Origin: Rebecca billardiae RCC1528
Lineage: Eukaryota > Protista > Haptophyta
Length of the DNA: 64,000 nt
Reading direction: 5' to 3'
Assembly (NCBI GenBank): GCA_965240325.2
Contig: OZ251231.1
Location: 2,232,001 to 2,296,000, forward strand
Both the position numbers and the translations under genes were made by a program. Of this stretch, positions 50,579 through 62,749 are shown piece by piece. The notes beneath the pieces were generated by a model. That model saw only the letters and a list, made by a program, of their open reading frames with translations. It made no database searches and was not told where the DNA came from. Position 1 is the first letter of the stretch, and each line of letters opens with the position of its first letter.

Positions 50579-53500
50579 CTAGGCTCCGCGTAGCTGCTCC
50601 GAGCCGTCGACGCGCACGTCACGCATCGGCGCGCCCGTGTCGAGCTTGCCCAGCCGCTCGAGCTGCTGCACGACCTCGGCGGGGCGCGGCCAGCGCACGA
50701 GCCGCACGTACCGGCCGAGGGCGACGGGCAGCGCGGCGCCCATCGCGATGGTCGCCGTGCCGAGCCAGTACGCCGGGTCGGCGTAGAGCGCGCCGAGCAC
50801 GCCGGCGCTGTCGTCGCCGTGCGGCACGCTCGTGTACAGCCAGAAGCCGAGGTGGAAGAGGCCGAGGCAGAGCGCGCACAGCCCGTGCGTCCAGCTGGCG
50901 GCGAACGAGGCGTGCTGCGCGTACACTGTGAGCACCTGCAGCTGCAGCGCCGCGGTGTACGCGGCGTACCCCGCGCCCTGCAGCTCGGCGCAGCTGCCCG
51001 AGGCGGGCGAGATGTACCCGACGTCGCCGAACGCGTGCAGCGCCGCGCCAAACACAAAGCACGCCTGCAGCAGCGCGCGCGCCCACCACGCGCCGATCGC
51101 GCGCGCGTGCAGCTCGCCGCCCGCCTGCGTGTGCGCGTACAGCTGCGGGCAGCGCAGCAGCGCACCCGCCGAGAGCTCGCGGTCGAAGAGCAGCGAGAAG
51201 CCCGTGAGCATGGTGAACGGCGCGTTCCACACCGTCACCGCCGCGCTCGGGAAGAGCGACGCGCCCGAGAAGCCGGTGCGCAGGTTGAAGAGCAGCTGGA
51301 TGCTCGCGAAGAAGATCGACTTGTAGAAGGTGTACAGGCAGATGGCGGCGGTGCGCTGGTGCGCGCGCGCGCCGTGCACGAGCAGCAGCCGCTGCAGGAA
51401 GCGGAAGCGGCCGAGCGTGTAGTCCGCGGCGCGCGCGGCCTGCAGCCCCTCCTTCCCCGCGATGCCCACGCCGATGTGCGCCTCCTGGATCATCGAGACG
51501 TCGTTGCCGCCGTCGCCGACCGCGAGCACGCGCATGCCGTCCTCGCCCGTGAGCTCCTTGAGCAGCCCGACCACGCGCGCCTTCTGCGAGGGCGTGGCGC
51601 GCGCGCAGATCACCGCGCTCGCGCCCAGGGCGAGCGAGCGGAAGTCGGCGCTGTTCGGCTCGCCCATCGCCAGCGAGAGCGCCGCGCCCTCCACGATCAG
51701 CGCGTACGCCGGCCCGGCGCCGTCGCTCGCGTCCGAGCGCGAGTGGCCGCCGTTGCCGTCCGCGGCCGCGGCGGCGCCGAGCCGCGCCCACGCGGTGCCG
51801 GGCGCGCGCGCGCCGTACCGGCCGGCGGCGAGGTGCCCGGCGTGCGTGCGGATCGCGCGGAGCACCTGCGTGGGCGTCTCGCCGCGCACGACGAGCACCG
51901 GCATCGGCTCGGCGAGCGTGCCCGACTCGAGCGAGGTCGCGCGCGTCGCGCCGCCCGGCGGCGGCGCGCCCGCGCGCGGCGCGGAGGGCGGCGCGGCGCC
52001 CCACGACGCGCCGCGCGACACTGCCGGCGGGGCGGGCGGCTGCGAGCCGGAGCTGGCGTGCGCGGGCGCGAAGGAGGGCGGCGCGGCGGCGCTGCTGCTC
52101 GCGCCGCCCGAGCCGCCCTTCGACAGCGCCGGCGGCGACGACGCCTGCGCGGACAGCAGCGAGGCGGACGAGGCGGCCGCTGCAGCGTACAGCCGCGCCG
52201 TGCTGAGCGCCGCGCGCTGCTGCGGCGGCGGCGGCGAGTCGAGGTCGCCGTCGACGAGCGAGGCGGTGCCGGTGGGCGAGCTGGGCTCGCGCTCGAAGGG
52301 GTCGGCGAGGTACGCGCCCTCGCTCACCAGGCTGCACGCGCGCGACACCTCCACCGCCGTCTCGCGCTTGTCCCCCGTGAGCATCCACACGCGCACGCCC
52401 GCCATCCGCAGCGCGGCGATGGTCTGCGGCACCTCGGGCTGCAGCCGGTCCTCGATCGCGGAGGCGCCCAGCAGCTCGAGCCGGCGCTCGATGGTCTCGA
52501 AGACCTCGGCGAGCTCGCCGCCGCGGTCGACGGTGGACACGCTCGCCTCGTGCAGCCGCGCCGCCCACGCCTGGTACTCGGCCTCGCCCAGCGGGCGCAT
52601 CGCCACCAGCAGCGTGCGCAGCCCCTGCCGCGCGAACCTGCGCGTGTGCCGCGCGGTGCGCGCCGCGCGCTCGTCGCGCGAGCCGTCCGCGACCGAGGCG
52701 AGGCGCGGGAGGATGACCTCGTCCGCGCCCTTGGCGAAGAGCACGAGCTGCCCCGTGCCCTCGTTCCGCGCGACGATCGCCATGCGCTTCCGCTCCGACG
52801 AGAACGGCAGCTCGTGCAGCACCGCCCAGTGCTCGAGCGAGCCGGCGCCGCCGCTCACGCACGAGAGCAGTGAGGAGCCTCGCGCGGACGTGGACGCGCG
52901 CGCGCGCGCCTTGCGCATGGCGAGCGCGGCGCGGCCGTCGGGGCGGCGCGAGACGAGCGCGACGCCGAAGTGCTGCGACGCGTCGCACAGCGCCTCCTCG
53001 TCCGGCGAGACCGACGAGTACGCGAACTCCGCCTCCGCCTCGAGCTCGGTCAGCTGCTCGGCAGACGCGGCCGACGAGCCGTCGCCGCGCTCCGTGCGGA
53101 GCGGCGTCGACGTGTTGCACAGCGCGAGGCAGCGCCAGAAGTTGAGCACGTCGAGCTGGCCCTGCTGCGTCCGCGCCGCCAGCGCCGCGTCCGCGTACAC
53201 CCCCTGCGCGCCGCACGTCGCCTCGTTCCCGTACTCCACCCCCCCAATACTCGCCCGACGAAACACCATCTCGTTCTCGGTGAGCGTGCCGGTCTTGTCG
53301 GTGAGCAGGAAGCCGATCTGGCCGAGGTCCTCGGGCACCGCGGTCGAGTTGGAGACGGCGCGCGTGTCGGTCGACTCGTCGTACATGTGCACGTCGTCCG
53401 AGATCCAGCGCGCGTACCTGCGCGCCGGCGGCGGCGAGCCAGCGCGCGCGCGCGGCGCGGCGAGCGAGCGCGCGCGTGAGGCGCGGCGAGCGAGCGCGCG

Positions 53501-54624
53501 CGTGTGGTGCGGCGAGCGAGCGCGCACGTCCAGCGCAGGATGTCCAGCGTGACGGCGAGGGAGATGGGTATCATGATGGACATGAGCAGCAGGAAGCGCA
53601 GCCCGTACACCATCCAGCGCAGCCGCGAGTCCTCCGGGCCGACGTCGAACATCAAGTAGGAGGCGCGCTCGCCCGCCGTCTCGCGCCACCGCACGCCGAG
53701 CACGCCAAACAGCAGCGTGAGCGCGAGCTGGAAGCAGAAGATGGCGACGGAGATGCGGTTGACGACGCGCTCGGCGGTGGGGTACTTGAACGGCGGCTCC
53801 TGCTTGTTGCACCCCAGCTTCGTCTGGCTGCCCGTGTACACCGCCACGCCCACCACCCACTCGCACTTGCGCACGTGCGTCGACTGCGGCAGGAACTGCT
53901 CCGAGCTCAGCCCGAGCCGCTGCACGTGCTCGGCGGTCGGGCCGGACTCGATGTTGAGCGTGGAGTCGAAGACGTAGATGTCCGCGTTCGGCGGCGCGCA
54001 CTCGACCACGCCGCGCAGCCCGCCCAGCCCGCCCAGCCCGAGTGCGTGCGTCTGCGGCAGCGCGCGCCGCAGCTTGAGGTCCGCCTCGCCGTCAATGTTG
54101 GTCGTCTGCACGTAGCACGTGCCGCGGCGCTGGCCCTCCTCGGAGGTGGCGAGGAGGACGAGGTCGCACGGCACCTCCTCGTTGCGCAGCACCCTCACCA
54201 GCTCGCCCACGCGGATGTCCGCCGAGCGCACGGTGCGCAGCTCGCCGGCCGGCGTGAAGACGTGGAACTCGCGCGCGTTGGCCGCGCGGTCACTCTCGGC
54301 GCGCTTGCGGTCGTCGAGGTGCTCCTTGAGCATGGAGACGACGGTGACGAGGATGAGCGGCCCCCACGTGCTCGCCGGGTTCACCGGCGTCAGGCTCGAG
54401 TCGAGCTGCAGGATCGCGATCAGCAGGAAGTAGCGGTTCATCGGCTTGGAGAACTGCTGCCACAGCGTCTTGATCAGGAAGTTCCATCGCGTGTACTTGG
54501 TGTTGGACACCTTGTTGTCCGGCAGCTCGAGGTCGGGCACGTTGACGCGCACGCGCCGGATCGTCTCCTGGCGCCGCGCGCCCGAGAGCCGCGGCCCCGA
54601 GAGCCTGGGAGCGCTTTGCGTCAT
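50579..54624 (-). CDS. P4-type ATPase (phospholipid flippase, ALA2-like); exons 54624-53528 and 53417-50579
   Basis: NKVSNTKY, TNIDGEAD, IPISL, EDLGQ..LTDKTGTLT, FSSERKRM, LTGDK and GDGGND. GT-AG intron 53527-53418. Confidence 0.95.
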
Positions 54625-56362
54625 CACCGCCGATCGAGGACCGCCATCGTGAGTTCGGCTGGAGAGTCAGCAGACTAGCAGAGACGCTGCGCGCTGCTGC
54701 TCGAGTGACTGAGGACTGCTTTCCTGCTTTATTCCTTTTGTCGTGGCTGCCACTGCCCAGTGCGGCGGCACGTCCGTGCATCTGGACGGGCATCGACCCT
54801 TGGCGAGGTAGCCAAATCGCGTGACTTAGTCCCGGCGAAGGCTGCTAGCAGCCGTGATCAGCTCGCACGCCATGTCCGTCGATGATCGCCCAGCTATTGA
54901 CAGGCGCCCACACGTATGTATCGGACGCGGTGACGCGGCCGCACGACTACCGCACATGAGCCAACCTCGTCCATCAGACTCACGACGTGTAGGCCAGACA
55001 GAACACCGGCGGGTCTGCACCCTGGCTGGCTGGCACGGCATGCCCAAGAGGTCACCATGGCCGTCAGGAGGGTGATCCTGGCCCCTACTACTACTTGCCC
55101 ATCCTTCCCACTCGGCAGTCGGCACAACAGCCTTATTCTGCGTCGGTTGCACTAGGACGGGGACGCGTCGGGCGTGAGGGTGGTGGAATAGGTCGAAGTG
55201 ATGCTGTCGCGCATGCTCTCGCGCACGTACGCCAGAACGGATCTGCCTGCGTCACGCCCCAATGACCCGTCAGCGGCGCTGGGCATTTGGATCGCGGTGG
55301 GACCGGCGGGCATTCACGCCCGTCATGTCTCCCACCTTCAAAAGTGGCAAATTGCAACTGGACCGCCCTGCAGGCGAGCCACCGTCGTTACCGCACGCCC
55401 CCCGGGGGGGCGCCGGCCCCCGAGGCATGCCACTTATTGCCACCTGTGTCGGGCCGCGCGCGCCAGCATCTGACGAACTCACAACGAACATTTCCGAACC
55501 GCTCGAGGCAAAACCCCATATGTTGCAGGAGAATGGCCTAGGCGGCGCGCGATCATACGCGACACAACTCCTTGCTGGGACCATGCCGTAGGTGTCTCCG
55601 TCTGTGCAGTGCTCACGCGCGGTTGACACCGGGCATTGTCTCGGGGGTACTGTTGCCGCATCGGCGGCGGCGGCACCTCGGCGATGCTCGACCTTGTTGA
55701 GGAGTTGTCGATGCCTGAGAATCAGTTCAGCGAATACCTCAATACCTGAATACCATGTCGTCACCGCGGCACTCGGTGTATCGGTCAGTGGTTTGAGGTT
55801 GGGTGAGGGTGGTGGTTGGTTGGGGGCTGGCCAGGGTAGGGCTGGAGGCTTCGGCCGCCAGTCTGATCACCCGGAGCCCGTTATAAAGGGGAATTTATAA
55901 ACACGGCATATATTTAAGTGACCGGGCCCAAAATAGTACGCATCTAGATACTGCTCAAATAGTCAAATACCCGGTCAGGCGGTCACTCGGTCCCGGCAAT
56001 CCCGCCGCGACTGTAAAACAGTCGCCATATTCAATCATTTGAAGAACCTAACGTCTTTACTATGACTTGCCGAGCACTGCTGTATTCATCACGAATTCAC
56101 ATTCTGGCGGTTCAACTCATTCAACTATTCAAGTATGCGCTAATAAATCAATGATTACAACGGTACGACTGGTAGCGCTGTTTTGATTGGTCAATTGCTT
56201 CCGATCTCGACCAAATCTGCACTTCCAAAAACTCCGAAGAAGAAGTTATCGTTGTCGTCTTGAATAGTTGGAATCCCCCCCCTGTCGGCGCACAGTGCGC
56301 AAGGGGAGCTCCGTGGTCGCGCGCGAGCCCGCCCCCCGGGGGCCCGCCGGGACCCCATTGGC

Positions 56363-59300
56363 ATGCCGCTTCGCCATCCGCGTCGGGCCACGCGCGCGCC
56401 GGCGTTGCTGCTGCTGCTCGCGCGCATCGCGTGCGCCGCCGCCGATACCCCCTGCCCGGGCGTGCCGCGGCCCTTTGTCCGCGAGCTGCCGTATGCGGCG
56501 GCCTCGGCCGCGGCCGCTGCGGCGGTGGACGCTCGCGGGTGCGTGCTGCGCTCGAACGTGTCGATCGCCTTCGTGCACCACGGCTCGGCGGCGAACTCCA
56601 TCTTCTGGCGGACGGTCGAAGACGGCGCCCGCCGCGCCGCCCTCGACCTGGGCGTCAATCTCGTGCTGCGCACGACGCCCTCGTTTGACCTCGCGGGCAT
56701 GTCGGCGCTGATCGACGAGGCGGTGGCCGCGCGGCCCGACGGGCTGGTGGTGAGCCTGCCGAACGTGGCGGCGCTCGCGCCCGCGGTGCGGCGCGCGGTC
56801 GCGAGCGGCGTCGTGGTCATCGCCATCAACTCGGGCGTGCACGACTTTGAGGCGCTCGGCGCCGTGCACTTTGTGGGGCAGGCGGAGCACGCCGCCGGGT
56901 ACGAGGCGTGCGGCCGGCTGCTGGCGGCGGGCGCGAGGCGCGTGCTCACGCTGGACCACCGCGCGGGGCTGGCGGCGGGTGTGAACGAGCGGCACGACGG
57001 CTGCGCGGCGCGCGCGCTCGAGCTCGGCGGCAGCGCGCACAAGGTGCACACCACCACCACGGAGGAGGTCGCGCTCGCGGACGTGCGCGCCGCGCTCGAC
57101 GCCGACCCGGCGCTGGACGCGGTGCTCGCGCTCTCGTCGGCGACGGTGGTGCCGGCGGCGCGCGCGGTCGCCGAGCTGCCGCCGACGCGCCCCGTGCTGC
57201 TCGGCAGCTTCGACTTCTCCGCCGAGATGAGCGCGATGCTCGAGTCGGGCGAGCTCCTCTTCGCGGTTGACCAGCAGCAGTACCTGCAGGGCACGCTGCC
57301 GCTGCACCTGCTCGCGGCGCGCGCGTCGAGCGCGCACCTGCCGCTACCGCCGCGCGAGGCGGACGGCGGCGCGGGGCCGATCGTGACGGGGCCGAGCTTC
57401 GTCACGGCGGGCGCGCACGCCGAGCGCAAGGCGTGCGAGGCGCAGGGCGTCTTCTACTGCGCCGAGCCCTCCACCTCACTCGCGGCCGCGCCCGCGCCCG
57501 GCTGTCCGTGCATCGAGCGCGGGGCCGTGCGGCTCGCGCTCGTCCTGCACGTCGAGTCGGCGCTGCGCGACGCGAGCAGCCTGTGGTCGCGGCTGGTGAA
57601 CGGCGCGGAGCTCGCGGCGGCGGACCGCGGCGTCTCCCTCGACGTGCTCTCGCCCGCGCGCACCGACAGCGCGGCGATGGCCGAGCTGCTGCTCGCGGCC
57701 GCGCGAGACGCGCAGCCGCCCTACGACGGAATCGTGAGCACCGCGCCCGGCGCCGCGCTGCTCGCGCCCGCCTTCGACGCGGCGCGCGCGCGCGGCACGC
57801 GCGTGGTCACGCTCTTCTCGCGCGACGGGTTCGAGGCGCGCGACCCCGCGCTGCGCGAGGCGCAGCTGCTGCACGTCGGGCAGGACGACGAGGCCGCCGG
57901 CTTCGAGGGCGCGCGCGCGGCGCTCGCGCTCGGCGACGCGGACGGCAACGGGACGAGCGCCGCGCCGGGCTGCGGCGGCGGCGGCGCGGCGGCGCTGCTG
58001 GTGATCGACCACGGCCTGGGCACGAGCCCGGAGCTGAACGCGCGCGTCGCGGGCGTGCGCCGCTACGCCAACACCTCGAGCGCCGTGCCCCCCGTCCGCG
58101 TCGAGCTCGTGCCGCTCGACGCGCAGAACGCGGCGCGCGCGAGCCAACAGCTCGACGCGGCGCTCGACGCGCTGGGCGGCGCGCCGTGCGTGCGCGCGGT
58201 GCTGGCGCTGGGCGAGCCGGGCACGCACGCGCTGCTCGGCGCGGGGCGGCTCGCCGGCGTGCCCGCCGGCGCGTTCGACCCGGACGCCGAGGCGCTCGCC
58301 GCGCTCGCCGACGGCCGCCTCGCCTTCGCCCTCGACCAGCAGCCGTGGCTGCAGGGGCACGCGGCGGTCGCGGTCGCGGCGGAGGCGGCACTCTCCGGTA
58401 ACGCGCCGGTCGGGCCGCGCGTGCTGCCCGCCGGGCCGCGCGTGCTGTGGGCGGGCGGCGAGGCGGCGATGGCGGCGGTGGCGGCGGCGAGCGCCAACGA
58501 CAGCGCGGTCGTCGAGTGGCGCGCCGCCCCCGAGCTCTCCGCACGACTCGCGTGCGAGGCGCGGCGCTTCGACGACGGCAGCGCGTCCAGCGCAGTCGTC
58601 GGCTGGGAGTGGTGCCCTGCGCCCGCCGCCGACGCGGACGGCGGCGAGGGCGAGGGCGGTGGGGGCGGCGGGGGCGAGGGCGCGGCGGCGTCCGGCGCGG
58701 CGGCGCCCGCCGCGGTCGAGAGCGCGGGCCCCGAGATCCTGATCGTCGCCGTGTTCGCACTCGCGGGCATTGCTGGCGTCGCGGTGGGTGGGCTGCTGCT
58801 GCTGGGCGCGGCGAGGCTGTACTCGCTCGCGCGCCAGGCGCTGGGCGCGCGGCGGGCGCAGGAGTCGCAGCTGCGCGCGCGCGTGGAGGGCGCGATGCAC
58901 GGCGTGCTCGACGTGCTGTACCCCGTCGCGCTCGTGCCGCTCCCCACGCTGCGCACGTGGGCGACCCTGCTCGAGCACGAGCGCGCGCTCGACAGCGGCT
59001 GCCTCGTGCTGCTGCACACGTACGAGCAGGCCAAGCGCTTCGTCACGCGCAGGCCGACCGTCTTCCTCTCGCACCGTGCGCGCGGCGCGCACGGCGCCGC
59101 GCGCCGCGGCCGCGCGCGCGCTCCCTGCCCCCTGACCCCGCCCGACCCCGCCCTGCGCTGTGCGCGCGCGCCGTGCGTGCGCGCCCGTGCCCGCGCGCGC
59201 GACGCGCGCCCCCTTTGTGCGCGTGCAGAGTGGCTTGCGTGGGGCGCGCCCGACCCCGAGGGGGAGCACCTGCGGCACATGGTGGCGGCCGTGCTCGCGC

Positions 59301-60817
59301 TGTGCGAGGCGGAGGAGCTGGTCGAGGAGGACGTGTACTGCTGGATCGACATCGTCTCGATCCCGCAGCACAACAAGGCGACACAGGCCCTCGCCGTGCG
59401 CGCGCTCGGCGTGTATGCGTCGATGATGCGCTACTTCATCGCCGTCTGCCCGCCGTGCACGCACGCCGAGACGCGGATGCCGTGCGACCTGCGCTCGTAC
59501 GGCACGCGCGGCTGGTGCCGGCTGGAGCAGTGGGCGCACCTCGCGGTGGCGGGCGTGGCCAACCTGTACGTCTCGGACGCGTTTGGCACGCTGCGCTCGG
59601 TGGACGAGGACTGGGTGCGCGAGTCCATCCTCGTCTTCGAAGGCACGTTCACTCTCGAGCGCGACCGCTTCAAGCTGGTGGACGTGGTGCTCGGGCTGTG
59701 GGCGCTCACGCTCGTCGCGAGGCGCGCCGGGTACGGCGGCGCGGAGGAGATGGCGGAGACGGTGGACGACCTGCGCGCGCGCGTCTTCCCGAGCGCGCTC
59801 TTTGGGCAGCTGGTCGAGCGGCTCGAGGCGGAGGTGCGCGTGCGCTTCGACGAGTGGGCGGCCGCGCACGCGCCGCACCTCGCGCCCGACGGCCGCGCGC
59901 GCGCCAGCAGCAGCGCGCGCGCCAGCGGGCGCGCGCGCTCCACCGCCGCCGGGCACGCCGCTCGCTTCTCGGTCCGCGTGACTCGCTTCTCGGTCGGGGG
60001 CGCGGCGCTCGGCGTGGGCGGCGGCAGGGGCCGCAGCCGGCGCCTCCGCTCGATGCCCGTGCACGCGGCCGAGGGCCTCGCCGGCTCGGAGCCGGGCTCG
60101 TTCTCGGGCGACATGCGCGCGTCGGAGCCCGAGCCCTCGCACACGCGGCTCTCGGCCGGCAGCGAGCGCGGCAACACGCCACCGGCGCTCACGACGCAGA
60201 TGTCGGGCGCGCTGCGCCCGCTGAGCGACGAGGAGCTCGCGGACGCGCGCGACGCGTTCCGTCTGATGGACACGGGCGCGCGCGGCGAGCTCAGCTGGGA
60301 CGGCTTCGAGCGCACGCTGCGGATGCTCGGGCTGGGCGCGCTGCCGCAGCAGGACGCGCGCGCCATCTTCGAGCAGCGCGCGCCCGGCGGCACCGTCGAC
60401 TTCGACGCGTTCACCGAGCTGGTGCTGTGCGCGCGGCGCAAGGTGCTCAGCATGCCGCAGGACGAGGGCGACGACTTGTTGGCCTCCGAGCTGCACGGCC
60501 GCAGCATCATCCACCAGCTGCTCGAGACGGTGCGCGTCACCTCGACCGAGCAGTTCCGACGCACCTCTTCGCACTACTCCGCGTCCACGCGCAAGTCGGG
60601 GCGGCGCGGCCTGAGCGGCGGGAGCTCGAGCTCGCATCGGCCGCCGTGCAGGGGCTCGGCCGCGCTGTCGGCGGTGTCGAGCGAGTACTCGGCGGACTGG
60701 GGTGGCGTCGTCCACGCCGCCGGGCTCACCGGGGACGACGGCGCGCCGCTCGAGCGCGGGCAGCACGGCGGCGTCGTCCGACTCGAGGCCGTGGCGGCGT
60801 CGCCGTCTGGCGCCGAG

Positions 60818-60853
<36 letters not shown>

Positions 60854-60919
60854 TTGGCCGGCGTCGACATCGTGCGCGAGATTGCCACGCCCACCGCTGC
60901 CGCCGCGGACGGCTTGTAG
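56363..60919 (+). CDS. Single-pass receptor-like protein: signal, two type-I periplasmic sugar-binding domains, TM, HET/TIR-like domain, EF-hand-like pair; intron 59076-59228
   Basis: PBP motifs (FWRTVEDGARRAALDLGV, PDGLVVS, FVGQAEHAAGY, FAVDQQQYLQG, with a second copy ending FALDQQPWLQG). TM at 58735-58812. Spliced FLSHQW..PDP, WIDIVSIPQ, RGWCRLE. EF-like DTGARGELSWDGF and GTVDFDAF. Confidence 0.85.
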
Positions 60920-61237
60920 CAGACTGCTCGAGTCGTCTGTCCGTCACTCTGTTGACGATCTACTGTGTCGGAATCGGAGAATCTCTTACGAAACGCAGCA
61001 CGCGACGATGTTGACGTTGTAACGGTGGACCGTTCATAAGCTACCCGAGCTGCAGCATGTCGATCGATGGAGTCAGTCTGTCAGAGCGCAGGGATTGTAG
61101 GTAGCACATGCTGTTACATCCTCAAGGCAAGAGCGCGCGAATCGGCAGTAAGAAGTGCAAGCAGCCCACCCACCCGAGCGGCCGAGCCCGAGGCGAGAGC
61201 GCCTCCGACATCAGCACGACGACTTCACCTGCGCTCG

Positions 61238-62749
61238 ATGGACGTCGCTCTTCCCCTCCGGCCGCACGTGCGCCCGTGCGTGGCCACGGCGCTGACGCTG
61301 AGCAGCCTGCCGGCCGAGGTCATCGAGCGCATCGTGACGCTCCTCGAGTGCACGCACGACATCGCCAGCGCCAACGCCACCGCGCGCCTCTTCCGCGGAG
61401 CGCCTGGGGCAGGCTCTCCTGTCGAGCATGCGCTGCGCGCGCGCGCCAGCATGCGCGGCCACGCGCTGCCGACGGCGCTGCTGGGCGACGTGCGCACGTG
61501 GACGGCCGAGCTGTTTCTCCGTGAGCGCGTGTGGGACGCCGCGCGCAGGCACGCCCTCGTCGTCGCCGCAGGCGGCGTGTATGCGATGGCGTTCAGCGCG
61601 TTTGTGGACGCGGACGGCGGGCTGCACACGTGCGGCGAGGTGGTGCAGAATGGCGCGCTGGTCACGCCGGCGCCGTGCGGGCATGGCGATGGGGCGCGGC
61701 GGCGGCGCGAGCCCCCCCTCGTGCCCACGCGTGTCGCCTCGCTCGGCGCCGTGCGCGTGCGTGCCGTCGCGGCAGGCTGGTCGCACCTTCTCGCGCTCAG
61801 CGGTGCGGGCGCCGTGTACGCGTGCGGCGAGGGCGGCCGCGGGCAGCTTGGGCTCGGCCGGCGGCGCGGCGCGGAGCGCGTGTCGACGTTCGCGCGCATC
61901 GACGCGCTCCGAGCCGTGCACGCCGTCGGCGTGGCCGCCGCGCACGCCCACAGCCTCGTGCTCGGCGCGTGCGGGCGCGTGCTCAGCTGGGGCAGCAACG
62001 AGTGGGGCGCGCTGTGCCAGGGCGAGCGCGCGCGCCAGGGCGCGTGCTGGGAGCCACGGGGCGCGGCGGCGCCGGCGGGCGTGCGCTTCGCGGCGGTGGC
62101 GGCCGGGCTGAACCACACGCTGCTTCTGTGCGCGGCAGGCGCCGTCTACTCCGCCGGCTGCGGCTTCGAGGGCCGGCTCGGCCACGGCGACGAGGAGCAC
62201 AAGGCCGTGCCGACGCGCGTCGAGGCGCTCGCGGGCGTGCGCGCCGTGCACGTGAGCGCGGGCGCGCTGCACAGCCTGGTGGTCGGCGCGTCGGGGCGCG
62301 TGCACGCGTTCGGCGACGGCGGGCACGCCGGGTGGCCCGACGAGCACACGGACGGCTGGCACTCGGTGCCGAGGCCGATCGCGGCGCTGGGCGCCGTCTC
62401 CGCCGTGCGCGCGAGCGCGGGCGCGCGGTACAGCGTTGTGATGGACGCAGACGGCGCCGTGCACGTGTGCGGCGACGGCGCGCTGCGGCTGCTCTGGCTG
62501 GCGCACGGCCGGTTCCGGGCGCTGGCGGCGCACCGCGCCGTGAGCTGCGCCCTCGGCGACCACGCGCTCTTCGTCACCGCCGATGGCAGCGTGCACTCGT
62601 GCGGCATGACCTCAGGCGCGCTCGGGCGCGGCCAGAGCATGGCCGAGGCGGGCGAGGACGCGCCCACGTGGCAACGCCACCTCGCCACGCGCTCGCTCGC
62701 GCGCATCGAGCGGCTGCCGCCTGTGCTCAGTCTCGGCGGCGGCCTGTGA
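61238..62749 (+). CDS. RCC1-repeat protein with an N-terminal F-box-like motif
   Basis: LSSLPAEVIERIV followed by RCC1 units (VAAGWSHLLAL..GAVYACGEGGRGQLGLG; AAGLNHTLLL..GRLGHGD). Confidence 0.85.
   Translation: MDVALPLRPHVRPCVATALTLSSLPAEVIERIVTLLECTHDIASANATARLFRGAPGAGSPVEHALRARASMRGHALPTALLGDVRTWTAELFLRERVWDAARRHALVVAAGGVYAMAFSAFVDADGGLHTCGEVVQNGALVTPAPCGHGDGARRRREPPLVPTRVASLGAVRVRAVAAGWSHLLALSGAGAVYACGEGGRGQLGLGRRRGAERVSTFARIDALRAVHAVGVAAAHAHSLVLGACGRVLSWGSNEWGALCQGERARQGACWEPRGAAAPAGVRFAAVAAGLNHTLLLCAAGAVYSAGCGFEGRLGHGDEEHKAVPTRVEALAGVRAVHVSAGALHSLVVGASGRVHAFGDGGHAGWPDEHTDGWHSVPRPIAALGAVSAVRASAGARYSVVMDADGAVHVCGDGALRLLWLAHGRFRALAAHRAVSCALGDHALFVTADGSVHSCGMTSGALGRGQSMAEAGEDAPTWQRHLATRSLARIERLPPVLSLGGGL

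What the first reader, a model, noticed from the sequence alone, without database searches (positions are those of the whole stretch)
56363..60919. Toll-like architecture built from bacterial-type sugar sensors: 2x PBP - TM - HET/TIR-like - EF-hand
Seen: one ORF has a signal peptide, two tandem domains with type-I periplasmic sugar-binding protein motifs (~56557-57410 and ~57526-58450), and a single TM. After removing intron 59076-59228 it reads FLSHQW...PDP...WIDIVSIPQ...Y.TRGWCRLE, then an EF-hand-like pair (~60220-60430). Established: RbsB-like PBPs are soluble parts of prokaryotic ABC transporters. The motifs LSxxW / WIDxxxIxQ / RxWxxxE define HET domains, which are TIR-related, and the WCxxE glutamate is the catalytic residue of TIR NADases. 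Inference: a surface receptor that converts binding of a sugar or small molecule into NAD+ cleavage or nucleotide-messenger signalling, with Ca2+ feedback. It could serve nutrient, prey or pathogen sensing. I do not recognise this as a characterised receptor class.
Basis: partly seen in the sequence, partly recalled or inferred. Interest (0 to 1): 0.85.

Follow-up and report, generated by a model that had tools for sequence, protein, structure and literature searches.

The report
Algal sugar-sensor receptor with HET-like output
This is a real two-exon gene of a very GC-rich, probably haptophyte alga for a cell-surface receptor that joins two bacterial-type sugar/inositol-binding domains outside the cell to a HET-type (TIR-related) domain inside, one member of a large, apparently undescribed family of modular receptors whose biochemistry is untested.

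Summary
ORF 56363-60919 (+) encodes a plausible signal peptide, two Peripla_BP_4 domains (Pfam E 1.9e-52 and 2.6e-24), one TM helix, a conserved ~250-aa cytoplasmic domain and an EF-hand pair.

Alignment of 58 homologues places the gap exactly at intron 59076-59228. Splicing there restores the family's constant 42/55-residue motif spacing.

The domain has over 1,200 representative relatives, mostly haptophyte. They follow many different sensor domains (PBPs, ANF_receptor, Cache, REC), so it acts as a modular signal-output domain.

NADase chemistry is inferred, not shown. Ca2+ feedback is weakened: both EF loops lack key ligands. The nearest bacterial PBPs lie in inositol-catabolism operons, so a cyclitol ligand is more likely than ribose.

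This scan already found two sister architectures on other DNA of the same genome (s1-332042, s1-341024). I found no paper describing this receptor class.

The parts
56363..59075 (+). Exon 1 of the receptor gene (start codon to splice donor)
   Evidence: The ORF starts at the ATG at 56363. GT at 59076. GC dips to 0.58 upstream, at 55500-56499.
56363..56443 (+). Probable signal peptide (aa 1-27)
   Evidence: Arg-rich N-terminus, a Leu/Ala-rich hydrophobic stretch, then AAA|D. This is a sequence reading only; no predictor was run.
56588..57322 (+). PBP domain 1 (Peripla_BP_4, CUT2-type, inositol/rhizopine-like)
   Evidence: Pfam E 1.9e-52. NCBIfam rhizopine SBP 1.4e-61, below its cutoff. PDB 4ru1 E 4e-30. 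It is 36-42% identical to bacterial binding proteins, which sit in iol operons in the two loci examined, L001 and L007.
57581..58390 (+). PBP domain 2 (Peripla_BP_4, more divergent, with a Gly-rich insertion near 57935-57985)
   Evidence: Pfam E 2.6e-24. It shares 33% identity with domain 1. PDB 4ru1 E 1.6e-9.
58733..58816 (+). Single transmembrane helix (aa 791-818)
   Evidence: It is the only 19-residue windows with Kyte-Doolittle mean above 1.8. The upstream side is acidic and the downstream side is Arg-rich, which puts the C-terminus in the cytoplasm.
58919..59836 (+). HET-like cytoplasmic domain (aa 853-1107 of the spliced protein, interrupted by the intron)
   Evidence: 1297 representative relatives. 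All invariant residues are present in the window's copy. AF2 pLDDT is above 90 outside the intron-coded loop. Pfam HET is hit by 20 of 59 members. TM 0.65-0.76 to fungal HET clusters.
59076..59228 (+). Intron: 153 nt, GT..AG, in frame and free of stop codons
   Evidence: Sequence. The alignment gap falls exactly here. Its translation is modelled as disordered at pLDDT below 50. Splicing restores the family's 42-residue spacing.
59229..60919 (+). Exon 2 (splice acceptor to stop codon)
   Evidence: AG at 59227-59228. ORF end.
59525..59527 (+). Codon of the invariant Glu of RGWCRLE, the candidate catalytic residue
   Evidence: This Glu is invariant in alignments A1-A4. It lies in the helix that follows the third core strand.
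60218..60433 (+). EF-hand pair (one lobe) with degenerate loops
   Evidence: phmmer against PDB finds centrin, troponin C and calmodulin at E 1e-8 to 1e-5. Pfam EF-hand_6 and EF-hand_7 hits are below threshold. Loop 1 has G at position 12. Loop 2 lacks position 1 and has A at position 12 (alignment).
60434..60916 (+). Ser/Gly/Ala-rich C-terminal tail, probably disordered
   Evidence: Sequence composition. No family hit.

Best explanation
The gene encodes a type I single-pass membrane receptor of 1467 aa after splicing.

Outside the cell sit two tandem bacterial-type class I binding domains. Homology and the gene context of their bacterial relatives suggest they bind an inositol-type cyclitol or a monosaccharide.

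Inside the cell sits a HET-superfamily domain, a TIR-like Rossmannoid fold extended by N-terminal strands and a C-terminal helical bundle. A degenerate EF-hand pair and a disordered tail follow.

Shown: the architecture, the intron, HET-superfamily membership by fold and weak sequence signal, and the modular reuse of this domain behind many sensors.

Inferred: ligand-induced closure or re-packing of the binding domains changes the oligomeric state of the cytoplasmic domains. This assembles an active site from the three invariant motif loops (SHQW after strand A, WxDxxSIPQ after strand B, RGWCRLE in helix C). The invariant Glu then drives cleavage of a nucleotide substrate of the NAD+ type. The result is a small-molecule signal or local nucleotide depletion.
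For: - Domains and topology.
- Intron.
- Family size: 1297 clusters at E<=1e-3 and 78 at E<=1e-30.
- Modularity: the same domain lies C-terminal to Peripla_BP_6, ANF_receptor, dCache/sCache, Phosphonate-bd, SBP_bac_1, OpuAC, FG-GAP, beta-helix, LamG and a Response_reg receiver. Structural neighbours include fusions with HNOB, LRR, Ank and MORN. This is the pattern expected of a signal-output domain.
- Active-site signature: eleven invariant and sixteen near-invariant positions, mostly polar or aromatic. They cluster after strands A and B and in helix C, the C-terminal edge of the sheet where Rossmannoid active sites lie.
- HET membership: 20 of 59 members hit PF06985, best E 1.3e-5, and no other family is hit more than twice. 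The hit covers the WxDxxSIPQ block. TM is 0.65-0.76 to Ascomycota HET clusters and one TPR cluster.
- Expression of the family: a relative over 90% identical to P0003, the closest homologue of the window's domain (50% identity), is a complete MMETSP transcript.
- Ligand class.
Against: - No enzymatic activity is known for any HET domain. It is listed as 'ND' in a 2025 review (PMC12881547).
- I could not superpose coordinates, so the Glu equivalence is not demonstrated.
- The window's own sequence does not reach any Pfam HET or TIR threshold.
- No RNA run was listed for this locus, so a single transcript is not directly shown.
- No orthologue with the same 2xPeripla_BP_4 architecture was found.
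Confidence: 0.45

Rival explanations
1. Same receptor architecture, but the HET-like domain is a non-enzymatic adaptor. Ligand binding drives homotypic HET-HET assembly that recruits soluble HET-like, Ank or TPR proteins, as animal TLR TIR domains recruit MyD88.
For: Many family members are short or are fused only to Ank, TPR, MORN or LRR repeats, so they could serve as adaptors. Dyrka et al. 2014 proposed adaptor function for HET (PMC4986451). MyD88, MAL and IL-1R-type TIRs are among the structural neighbours.
Against: An adaptor surface rarely keeps this many invariant polar residues (E, S, H, Q, D, D, S, Q, Y, R, C, R, E) across more than 50 sequences at 30-45% identity. Many of the short hits are probably fragments from short contigs.
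Confidence: 0.22
2. The domain is an enzyme with a chemistry other than TIR-type NAD+ cleavage. Candidates are a nucleoside or nucleotide N-glycosidase/transferase (NDT/MilB-like), or a nucleotide-sugar-binding domain like the C-terminal half of GT-B fucosyltransferases.
Confidence: 0.2
3. The HET-like domain is a cell-death executor, as in fungal heterokaryon incompatibility. The receptor would trigger programmed cell death, for example on sensing a pathogen or a population cue, rather than routine signalling.
For: Fungal HET domains suffice to induce cell death (Paoletti & Clave 2007, cited in PMC10197012 and PMC12881547). TM-TIR genes of G. huxleyi are induced early in virus infection (PMC12489294).
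Against: The family's inputs include nutrient-type sensors (amino-acid, phosphonate, glycine-betaine and sugar binding proteins), receivers and NO sensors. These suit routine environmental signalling better than suicide. This rival is also compatible with either biochemical mechanism above.
Confidence: 0.1
4. Gene-model artefact: the long ORF fuses two neighbouring genes, or is a pseudogene kept open only by the high GC content.
For: Stop-free frames are common at 75-81% GC, for example the antisense ORF of 1115 aa. No RNA evidence is available.
Against: Signal peptide, two PBPs, TM, positive-inside stretch, HET-like domain and EF-hand pair all lie in one frame and in a logical order. Every invariant residue of the family is intact. 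The same ectodomain-TM-HET-like order recurs in independent proteins from other organisms.
Confidence: 0.03

Closest known systems
Fungal HET domain (Pfam PF06985; HET-E, TOL, PIN-C and others)
   Same: Three motif blocks appear in the same order: an aromatic/Ser/Trp block after strand A, WxDxxCIxQ-like, and RxWxxxE. Pfam hits recur across the family. The predicted fold matches at TM 0.65-0.76.
   Different: The algal family has its own signature (FxSHQW, PDP, SIPQ, RGWCRLE), plus an N-terminal two-strand extension and a C-terminal helical bundle. It sits C-terminal to sensor domains and TM helices, not N-terminal to NACHT/WD40. The window's sequence itself does not reach the Pfam threshold.
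TIR domains with NADase activity (SARM1, plant TNL TIRs, bacterial ThsB/AbTir/SpbK) and Toll-like receptors
   Same: Ectodomain-TM-cytoplasmic Rossmannoid domain topology. A WCxxE motif lies in the helix after the third strand. TIRs are prominent, though not predominant, among the solved-structure neighbours.
Transmembrane TIR receptor-like proteins of Gephyrocapsa huxleyi (New Phytol 2025, PMC12489294)
   Same: A haptophyte protein with a ligand-binding-type (leucine-binding/EGF-like) ectodomain, one TM helix and an intracellular TIR-type domain with a conserved Glu. It was proposed to generate signalling molecules.
   Different: Those proteins were defined by Pfam TIR families through HHsuite. 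Whether any belongs to the HET-like family here could not be checked, because no supplement is held.
Eukaryotic receptors built on class I binding-protein folds (natriuretic-peptide receptor guanylyl cyclases, class C GPCRs) and bacterial BvgS-type sensors with tandem Venus-flytrap domains
   Same: The logic is the same: a periplasmic-binding-protein fold outside, a membrane span, and an enzymatic or signalling output inside. ANF_receptor and Peripla_BP_6 members of the same HET-like family exist.
   Different: The output here is a HET-like domain, not a cyclase, kinase or 7TM core. The binding domains are the Peripla_BP_4 (CUT2 sugar/inositol) subtype.
Bacterial CUT2 inositol/rhizopine ABC-transporter binding proteins (NCBIfam NF052284; PDB 4ru1)
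   Same: 36-42% identity over the whole domain. Same Pfam family.
   Different: Here the domain is duplicated in tandem, tethered by its own TM helix, and has no ABC permease or ATPase partner. The score is below the equivalog cutoff (208 vs 420 bits), so the ligand may differ.

Membership tests
HET domain (PF06985) | Three conserved blocks in order with comparable spacing, including the R-x-W-x-x-x-E block | tested here: met
   FLSHQW, WIDIVSIPQ and RGWCRLE lie at spacings of 42 and 55 residues, invariant across homologues. The comparison with the fungal consensus is from my memory of the Pfam logo.
HET domain (PF06985) | Match to the Pfam HMM at or above the gathering score | tested here: not met
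   The window's domain gives no HET hit even at E<=10. Among family members, 20 of 59 hit weakly, best E 1.3e-5, and most are below 22.5 bits.
HET domain (PF06985) | Same three-dimensional fold as fungal HET domains | tested here: met
   The core model (pLDDT 95) matches Ascomycota clusters that are 99-100% PF06985 at TM 0.65-0.67 with 152-155 aligned residues. It matches an Ascomycota TPR cluster at TM 0.76 with rmsd 2.2. Both sides of each comparison are predicted models.
HET domain (PF06985) | Induces cell death when expressed | not testable with these tools
   This needs an experiment.
TIR domain (NADase type) | Sequence-profile match to a TIR family | tested here: not met
   No Pfam TIR family was hit at E<=10 in any of the 59 members. 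No TIR model in PADLOC was hit. No PDB sequence hit was found.
TIR domain (NADase type) | Flavodoxin-like alpha/beta fold closest to solved TIRs | tested here: inconclusive
TIR domain (NADase type) | Catalytic Glu in helix C positioned at the NAD+ pocket | tested here: inconclusive
   An invariant Glu lies five residues into the helix after the third strand, within W-C-x-x-E. No coordinate superposition was possible.
TIR domain (NADase type) | NAD+ cleavage activity | not testable with these tools
   This needs a biochemical assay.
Peripla_BP_4 / CUT2 sugar-binding proteins | Pfam HMM match above the gathering score | tested here: met
   The whole-ORF score is 178.8 bits (both stretches together), and the second domain scanned on its own scores 86.6 bits, against a cutoff of 35.1.
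Peripla_BP_4 / CUT2 sugar-binding proteins | Works with an ABC permease/ATPase as a soluble or lipid-anchored subunit | tested here: not met
   The domains are part of a 1467-aa TM protein. The neighbouring genes are a P4-ATPase and an RCC1-like protein, not ABC components.
Canonical Ca2+-binding EF-hand | Helix-loop-helix pair homologous to the calmodulin/troponin C lobe | tested here: met
   phmmer against PDB gives E 1e-8 to 1e-5 over residues 3-84 of the 90-aa segment.
Canonical Ca2+-binding EF-hand | 12-residue loop with acidic ligands at positions 1, 3, 5 and 12 | tested here: not met
   Loop 1 reads D-T-G-A-R-G-E-L-S-W-D-G. Loop 2 has a two-residue deletion that removes position 1, and it ends in A (alignment).
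Toll-like receptors | Leucine-rich-repeat ectodomain | tested here: not met
   The ectodomain consists of two Peripla_BP_4 domains with no LRR hit.

The most novel reading that the evidence does not exclude
The HET-like domain is a ligand-regulated enzyme that makes or destroys a nucleotide-derived second messenger. In haptophytes and other protists it would serve as a general signal-output module, comparable in role to cyclase, GGDEF or kinase domains, behind hundreds of different sensors. This receptor would couple extracellular cyclitol or sugar sensing to that messenger. The family would also give the first biochemical handle on the long-unexplained fungal HET death domain.
Probability: 0.35. 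Interest if true: 0.85.

Novelty: new variant of a known kind. Interest (0 to 1): 0.66.

Why it matters
Haptophytes are major marine primary producers, yet how they sense dissolved molecules is almost unknown. Here a single uncharacterised cytoplasmic domain is wired to a wide range of sensors: sugar/inositol, amino-acid, phosphonate and betaine binding proteins, Cache domains, receivers, and (from structural neighbours) NO sensors. That points to a whole signalling system absent from textbook eukaryotes.

The domain belongs structurally to the fungal HET family. HET domains kill cells by an unknown mechanism, and the suspected link to TIR NADases has never been tested. The algal receptors are soluble-domain targets with invariant candidate catalytic residues and predictable ligands, which makes that question testable.

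This gene also shows a bacterial-type CUT2 binding protein duplicated and recruited as a eukaryotic receptor ectodomain.

Tried and rejected
- Pfam and NCBIfam on the window's cytoplasmic domain gave only chance hits such as DUF3618 and T2SSK.
- A profile search of PDB sequences with the family alignment gave nothing below E 0.5.
- Foldseek with the full-length domain model, which includes the intron-coded loop, gave nothing below E 0.7. Trimming to the core improved this.
- PADLOC defence models gave one stray Avs2 hit among 58 members.
- ESM Atlas feature search restricted to named clusters was uninformative: MORN at 0.76.
- The word-indexed protein search was crippled by low-complexity words. 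It gave 2 hits for the cytoplasmic region, 5 for the profile and none for the tandem PBP region, so these blanks mean little.
- The RNA-run search listed no run, so read laying was not used and transcript structure is unverified.
- The metagenome scan for orthologues with the same architecture returned only single bacterial binding proteins.
- I tried to check whether G. huxleyi 'cogent1101_i1' (PMC12489294) belongs to this family. No supplement is held, and no fetched homologue has its Glu at position 836.
- No second copy of either domain lies elsewhere in the window.
- A plastid-targeting reading was rejected. There is no Phe after the predicted signal-peptide cleavage site. This rests on sequence reading and on my own knowledge of the ASAFAP rule.
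Full report
**1. What is in the sequence**

The window around the finding is extremely GC-rich: 0.75-0.81 inside the ORF, falling to 0.58 just upstream and 0.67 just downstream. One frame is open from the ATG at 56363 to the stop at 60919. Stop-free frames are cheap at this GC content, and an antisense ORF of 1115 aa overlaps the gene. The frame must therefore be judged by its content, not its length.

Pfam finds Peripla_BP_4 twice:
- aa 76-320, E 1.9e-52, far above the gathering score.
- A second, more divergent copy at 57581-58390, E 2.6e-24.

The two copies are 33% identical to each other.

The only strongly hydrophobic 19-residue segment is aa 791-818 (58733-58816). An acidic, Gly-rich linker precedes it and an Arg-rich stretch follows it. 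By the positive-inside rule this puts the C-terminal part in the cytoplasm.

The N-terminus has Arg-rich, Leu/Ala-rich and AAA|D segments and reads as a signal peptide. This is my sequence reading only.

**2. The intron**

Positions 59076-59228 begin GT, end AG, span 153 nt and are in frame without stops. Three results show that this is a real intron.
- In an alignment of the unspliced translation with 58 homologues, the gap falls exactly between H65 and Q117, which are the intron boundaries.
- Of 86 homologues carrying all three motifs, about 80 have distances of 42 and 55 residues between them and the rest differ by a few residues. The spliced product has exactly those distances.
- AlphaFold models the intron-coded 51 residues as disordered (pLDDT below 50), while the rest of the domain is above 90.

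The spliced protein is 1467 aa.

**3. The cytoplasmic domain is a large, unannotated family**

phmmer of exon-2 residues against 1.84 billion cluster representatives gave 1297 proteins at E<=1e-3 and 78 at E<=1e-30.

Named members come from Prymnesium parvum and P. polylepis, where they are annotated only as hypothetical proteins. One member is a complete MMETSP transcript, so the family is expressed. Atlas clusters are mostly Haptophyta.

The conserved unit is about 280 residues:
- An N-terminal extension carrying an invariant Glu (the HE..R motif).
- FxSHQW, then PDP.
- WxDYxSIPQ.
- Y..RGWCRLE.
- VFxGDFT.
- A helical bundle ending in VFP..F..L...LE.

The window's copy keeps every invariant residue.

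**4. It behaves as a modular output domain**

Seventy-nine longer homologues were scanned with Pfam. In them the domain lies C-terminal to Peripla_BP_6, ANF_receptor, dCache_1/2, sCache_2, Phosphonate-bd, SBP_bac_1, OpuAC, FG-GAP, beta-helix, laminin-G, Ig-like and EGF modules, and a Response_reg receiver. It also occurs with ankyrin repeats.

Two full sequences show different N-terminal halves ahead of the same module: a large ectodomain with a multi-pass membrane region in one, and a repeat-rich ectodomain with a single hydrophobic span in the other. One of them is followed by a canonical EF-hand.

Structural neighbours add fusions with HNOB (NO sensor), LRR, MORN and TPR.

The closest relative of the window's domain (50% identity) is a receiver-domain fusion. 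This pattern of inputs is typical of signal-output enzymes in prokaryotic signalling. In eukaryotes the comparable case is the guanylyl cyclase behind ANF receptors. That comparison is my inference from established knowledge.

**5. What fold and family**

The window's own sequence hits no Pfam family in this region. Scanning all 59 aligned members gives HET (PF06985) in 20 of them, best E 1.3e-5. No other family appears more than twice. Where inspected, the hit covers the WxDxxSIPQ block against profile positions 45-73.

A model of the core was built from the closest homologue with a 58-sequence alignment. It has pLDDT 95 and pTM 0.90. Comparisons with it gave:

| Compared with | Result |
|---|---|
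| Ascomycota clusters that are 99-100% PF06985 | TM 0.65-0.67, 152-155 aligned residues |
| An Ascomycota TPR-protein cluster | TM 0.76, rmsd 2.2 Å |
| Solved structures, Foldseek | Mostly TIR (RPS4/RRS1, TIR-STING, SARM1, SPARTA, RUN1, AbTir), SEFIR and nucleoside deoxyribosyltransferases; E 0.01-0.1, TM 0.35-0.43 |

My conclusions are as follows.
- The domain is a divergent member of the HET superfamily. This is well supported.
- It has a TIR/NDT-class Rossmannoid fold. This is supported.
- Specific TIR membership is not shown.

Dyrka et al. 2014 had already reported remote HET-TIR similarity. They also reported HET homologues in Haptophyceae, including an Emiliania sequence (PMC4986451).

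**6. Mechanism**

The invariant residues lie in the loop after strand A (S-H-Q-W, PDP), in the loop after strand B (D..S.PQ), and in the helix after strand C (R.WCR.E). These positions form the C-terminal edge of the parallel sheet, where Rossmannoid enzymes, TIR NADases included, bind their nucleotide. That last statement is established knowledge.

The W-C-x-x-E spacing equals that of the plant TIR helix-C motif that carries the catalytic Glu. This is from my knowledge. I could not superpose coordinates, so the equivalence is an inference.

This degree of polar invariance argues for catalysis rather than mere scaffolding. However, no HET domain has a known activity or solved structure. Both are listed as 'ND' in a 2025 review (PMC12881547; see also PMC10197012).

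I therefore rate the possibilities as follows:
- Receptor with an enzymatic, Glu-dependent, NAD+-type nucleotide-cleaving output: 0.45.
- Adaptor-type signalling: 0.22.
- A different nucleotide or nucleotide-sugar chemistry: 0.20.
- Death-executor role: 0.10.
- Gene-model artefact: 0.03.

**7. The ligand side**

PBP1's best NCBIfam match is the rhizopine (inosamine) catabolism binding protein, E 1.4e-61, 208 bits, below the 420-bit equivalog cutoff. Its match to RbsB is negligible. Its best solved relative is the CUT2 protein 4ru1, E 4e-30.

In one genome per bacterial species, the closest relatives are 36-42% identical binding proteins of Actinomycetota, Chloroflexota and Gemmatimonadota. In the two loci examined, the gene order is iolE-like dehydratase, binding protein, permease and ATPase. 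In the Nocardia locus, iolC (5-dehydro-2-deoxygluconokinase, above its cutoff) follows.

The likeliest ligand class is therefore an inositol-type cyclitol, with monosaccharides second. This is an inference from about 40% identity plus gene context.

From memory and unchecked: pavlovophyte haptophytes accumulate cyclitols as osmolytes, which would make such a sensor biologically sensible.

No protein with the same tandem Peripla_BP_4-TM-HET-like architecture was found. Both of those searches have limited reach.

**8. The EF-hand pair**

Residues encoded by 60218-60433 match the N-lobes of centrin, troponin C and calmodulin at E 1e-8 to 1e-5, so the pair is real. In the printed alignment:
- Loop 1 has Gly at positions 3 and 12 and Arg at position 5.
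- Loop 2 has lost position 1 through a two-residue deletion and has Ala at positions 3 and 12.

Canonical Ca2+ binding is therefore unlikely, and the 'Ca2+ feedback' idea is weakened. A canonical EF-hand does follow the domain in at least one homologue, so the association may be ancestral.

**9. Context and prior art**

The neighbouring genes are a P4-type phospholipid flippase on the minus strand (50579-54627, in at least two ORF pieces) and an RCC1-like repeat protein that starts only about 150 bp downstream. This is an ordinary nuclear context.

Literature searches found no description of receptors with a HET-like output. The nearest published concept is the TM-TIR receptor-like genes of G. 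huxleyi, which are induced on virus infection (PMC12489294).

Within this scan, two follow-ups on other DNA of the same genome reached the same reading for sister architectures: s1-332042 (BMP ectodomain-TM-HET/TIR-like) and s1-341024 (PA-7TM-TIR/HET-like). I re-derived the family properties independently here. These notes agree with my reading but are not independent evidence.

**10. Verdict**

- Architecture, intron, HET assignment and receptor logic hold.
- TIR-type NADase chemistry is plausible but untested.
- Ca2+ feedback is unlikely.
- The ligand is more likely a cyclitol than ribose.

Novelty: a new variant of a known kind. A HET-superfamily domain is used as the output of binding-protein-type surface receptors, within a large undescribed protist family.

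Noticed in passing
window 50579-54627 (-): A P4-type phospholipid-translocating ATPase (flippase) gene split over at least two ORFs. Hits are PhoLip_ATPase_N and E1-E2_ATPase in one ORF, and Cation_ATPase, Hydrolase and PhoLip_ATPase_C in the other. The split implies one or more introns.
   Followed up: partly
window 61067-62749 (+): An RCC1-like repeat protein (WD40_RLD E 9.6e-50, RCC1 repeats) starts only about 150 bp after the receptor's stop codon, so the intergenic spacing is very compact.
   Followed up: partly
window 57476-60823 (-) and other frames: Very long antisense and off-frame ORFs (up to 1115 aa) overlap the gene. They are Arg/Ala-rich by-products of 75-81% GC, not genes, and they warn against using ORF length as evidence in this genome.
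   Followed up: partly
window ~57935-57985 (+): The second binding domain has an insertion of about 17-25 residues, Gly/Ala-rich, relative to the first domain and to the Pfam profile. It could be a loop or a small in-frame intron.
   Followed up: no
P0003 / P0156 (homologues; MMETSP transcript): The closest relative of the window's HET-like domain (50% identity) is fused to a Response_reg receiver domain. This suggests that some members are controlled by phosphorelay.
   Followed up: partly
L007:1914-6640 and L001:1948-5955 (bacterial loci): The bacterial binding proteins closest to PBP1 sit in an operon of iolE-like dehydratase, binding protein, permease and ATPase. In the Nocardia locus (L007), iolC follows. 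This points to inositol-type ligands.
   Followed up: yes
ESM Atlas clusters: Haptophyte clusters in which the same fold is joined to a heme NO-binding (HNOB) domain, LRR_6, MORN or ankyrin repeats. An Ascomycota TPR cluster has an unannotated domain that matches at TM 0.76.
   Followed up: no
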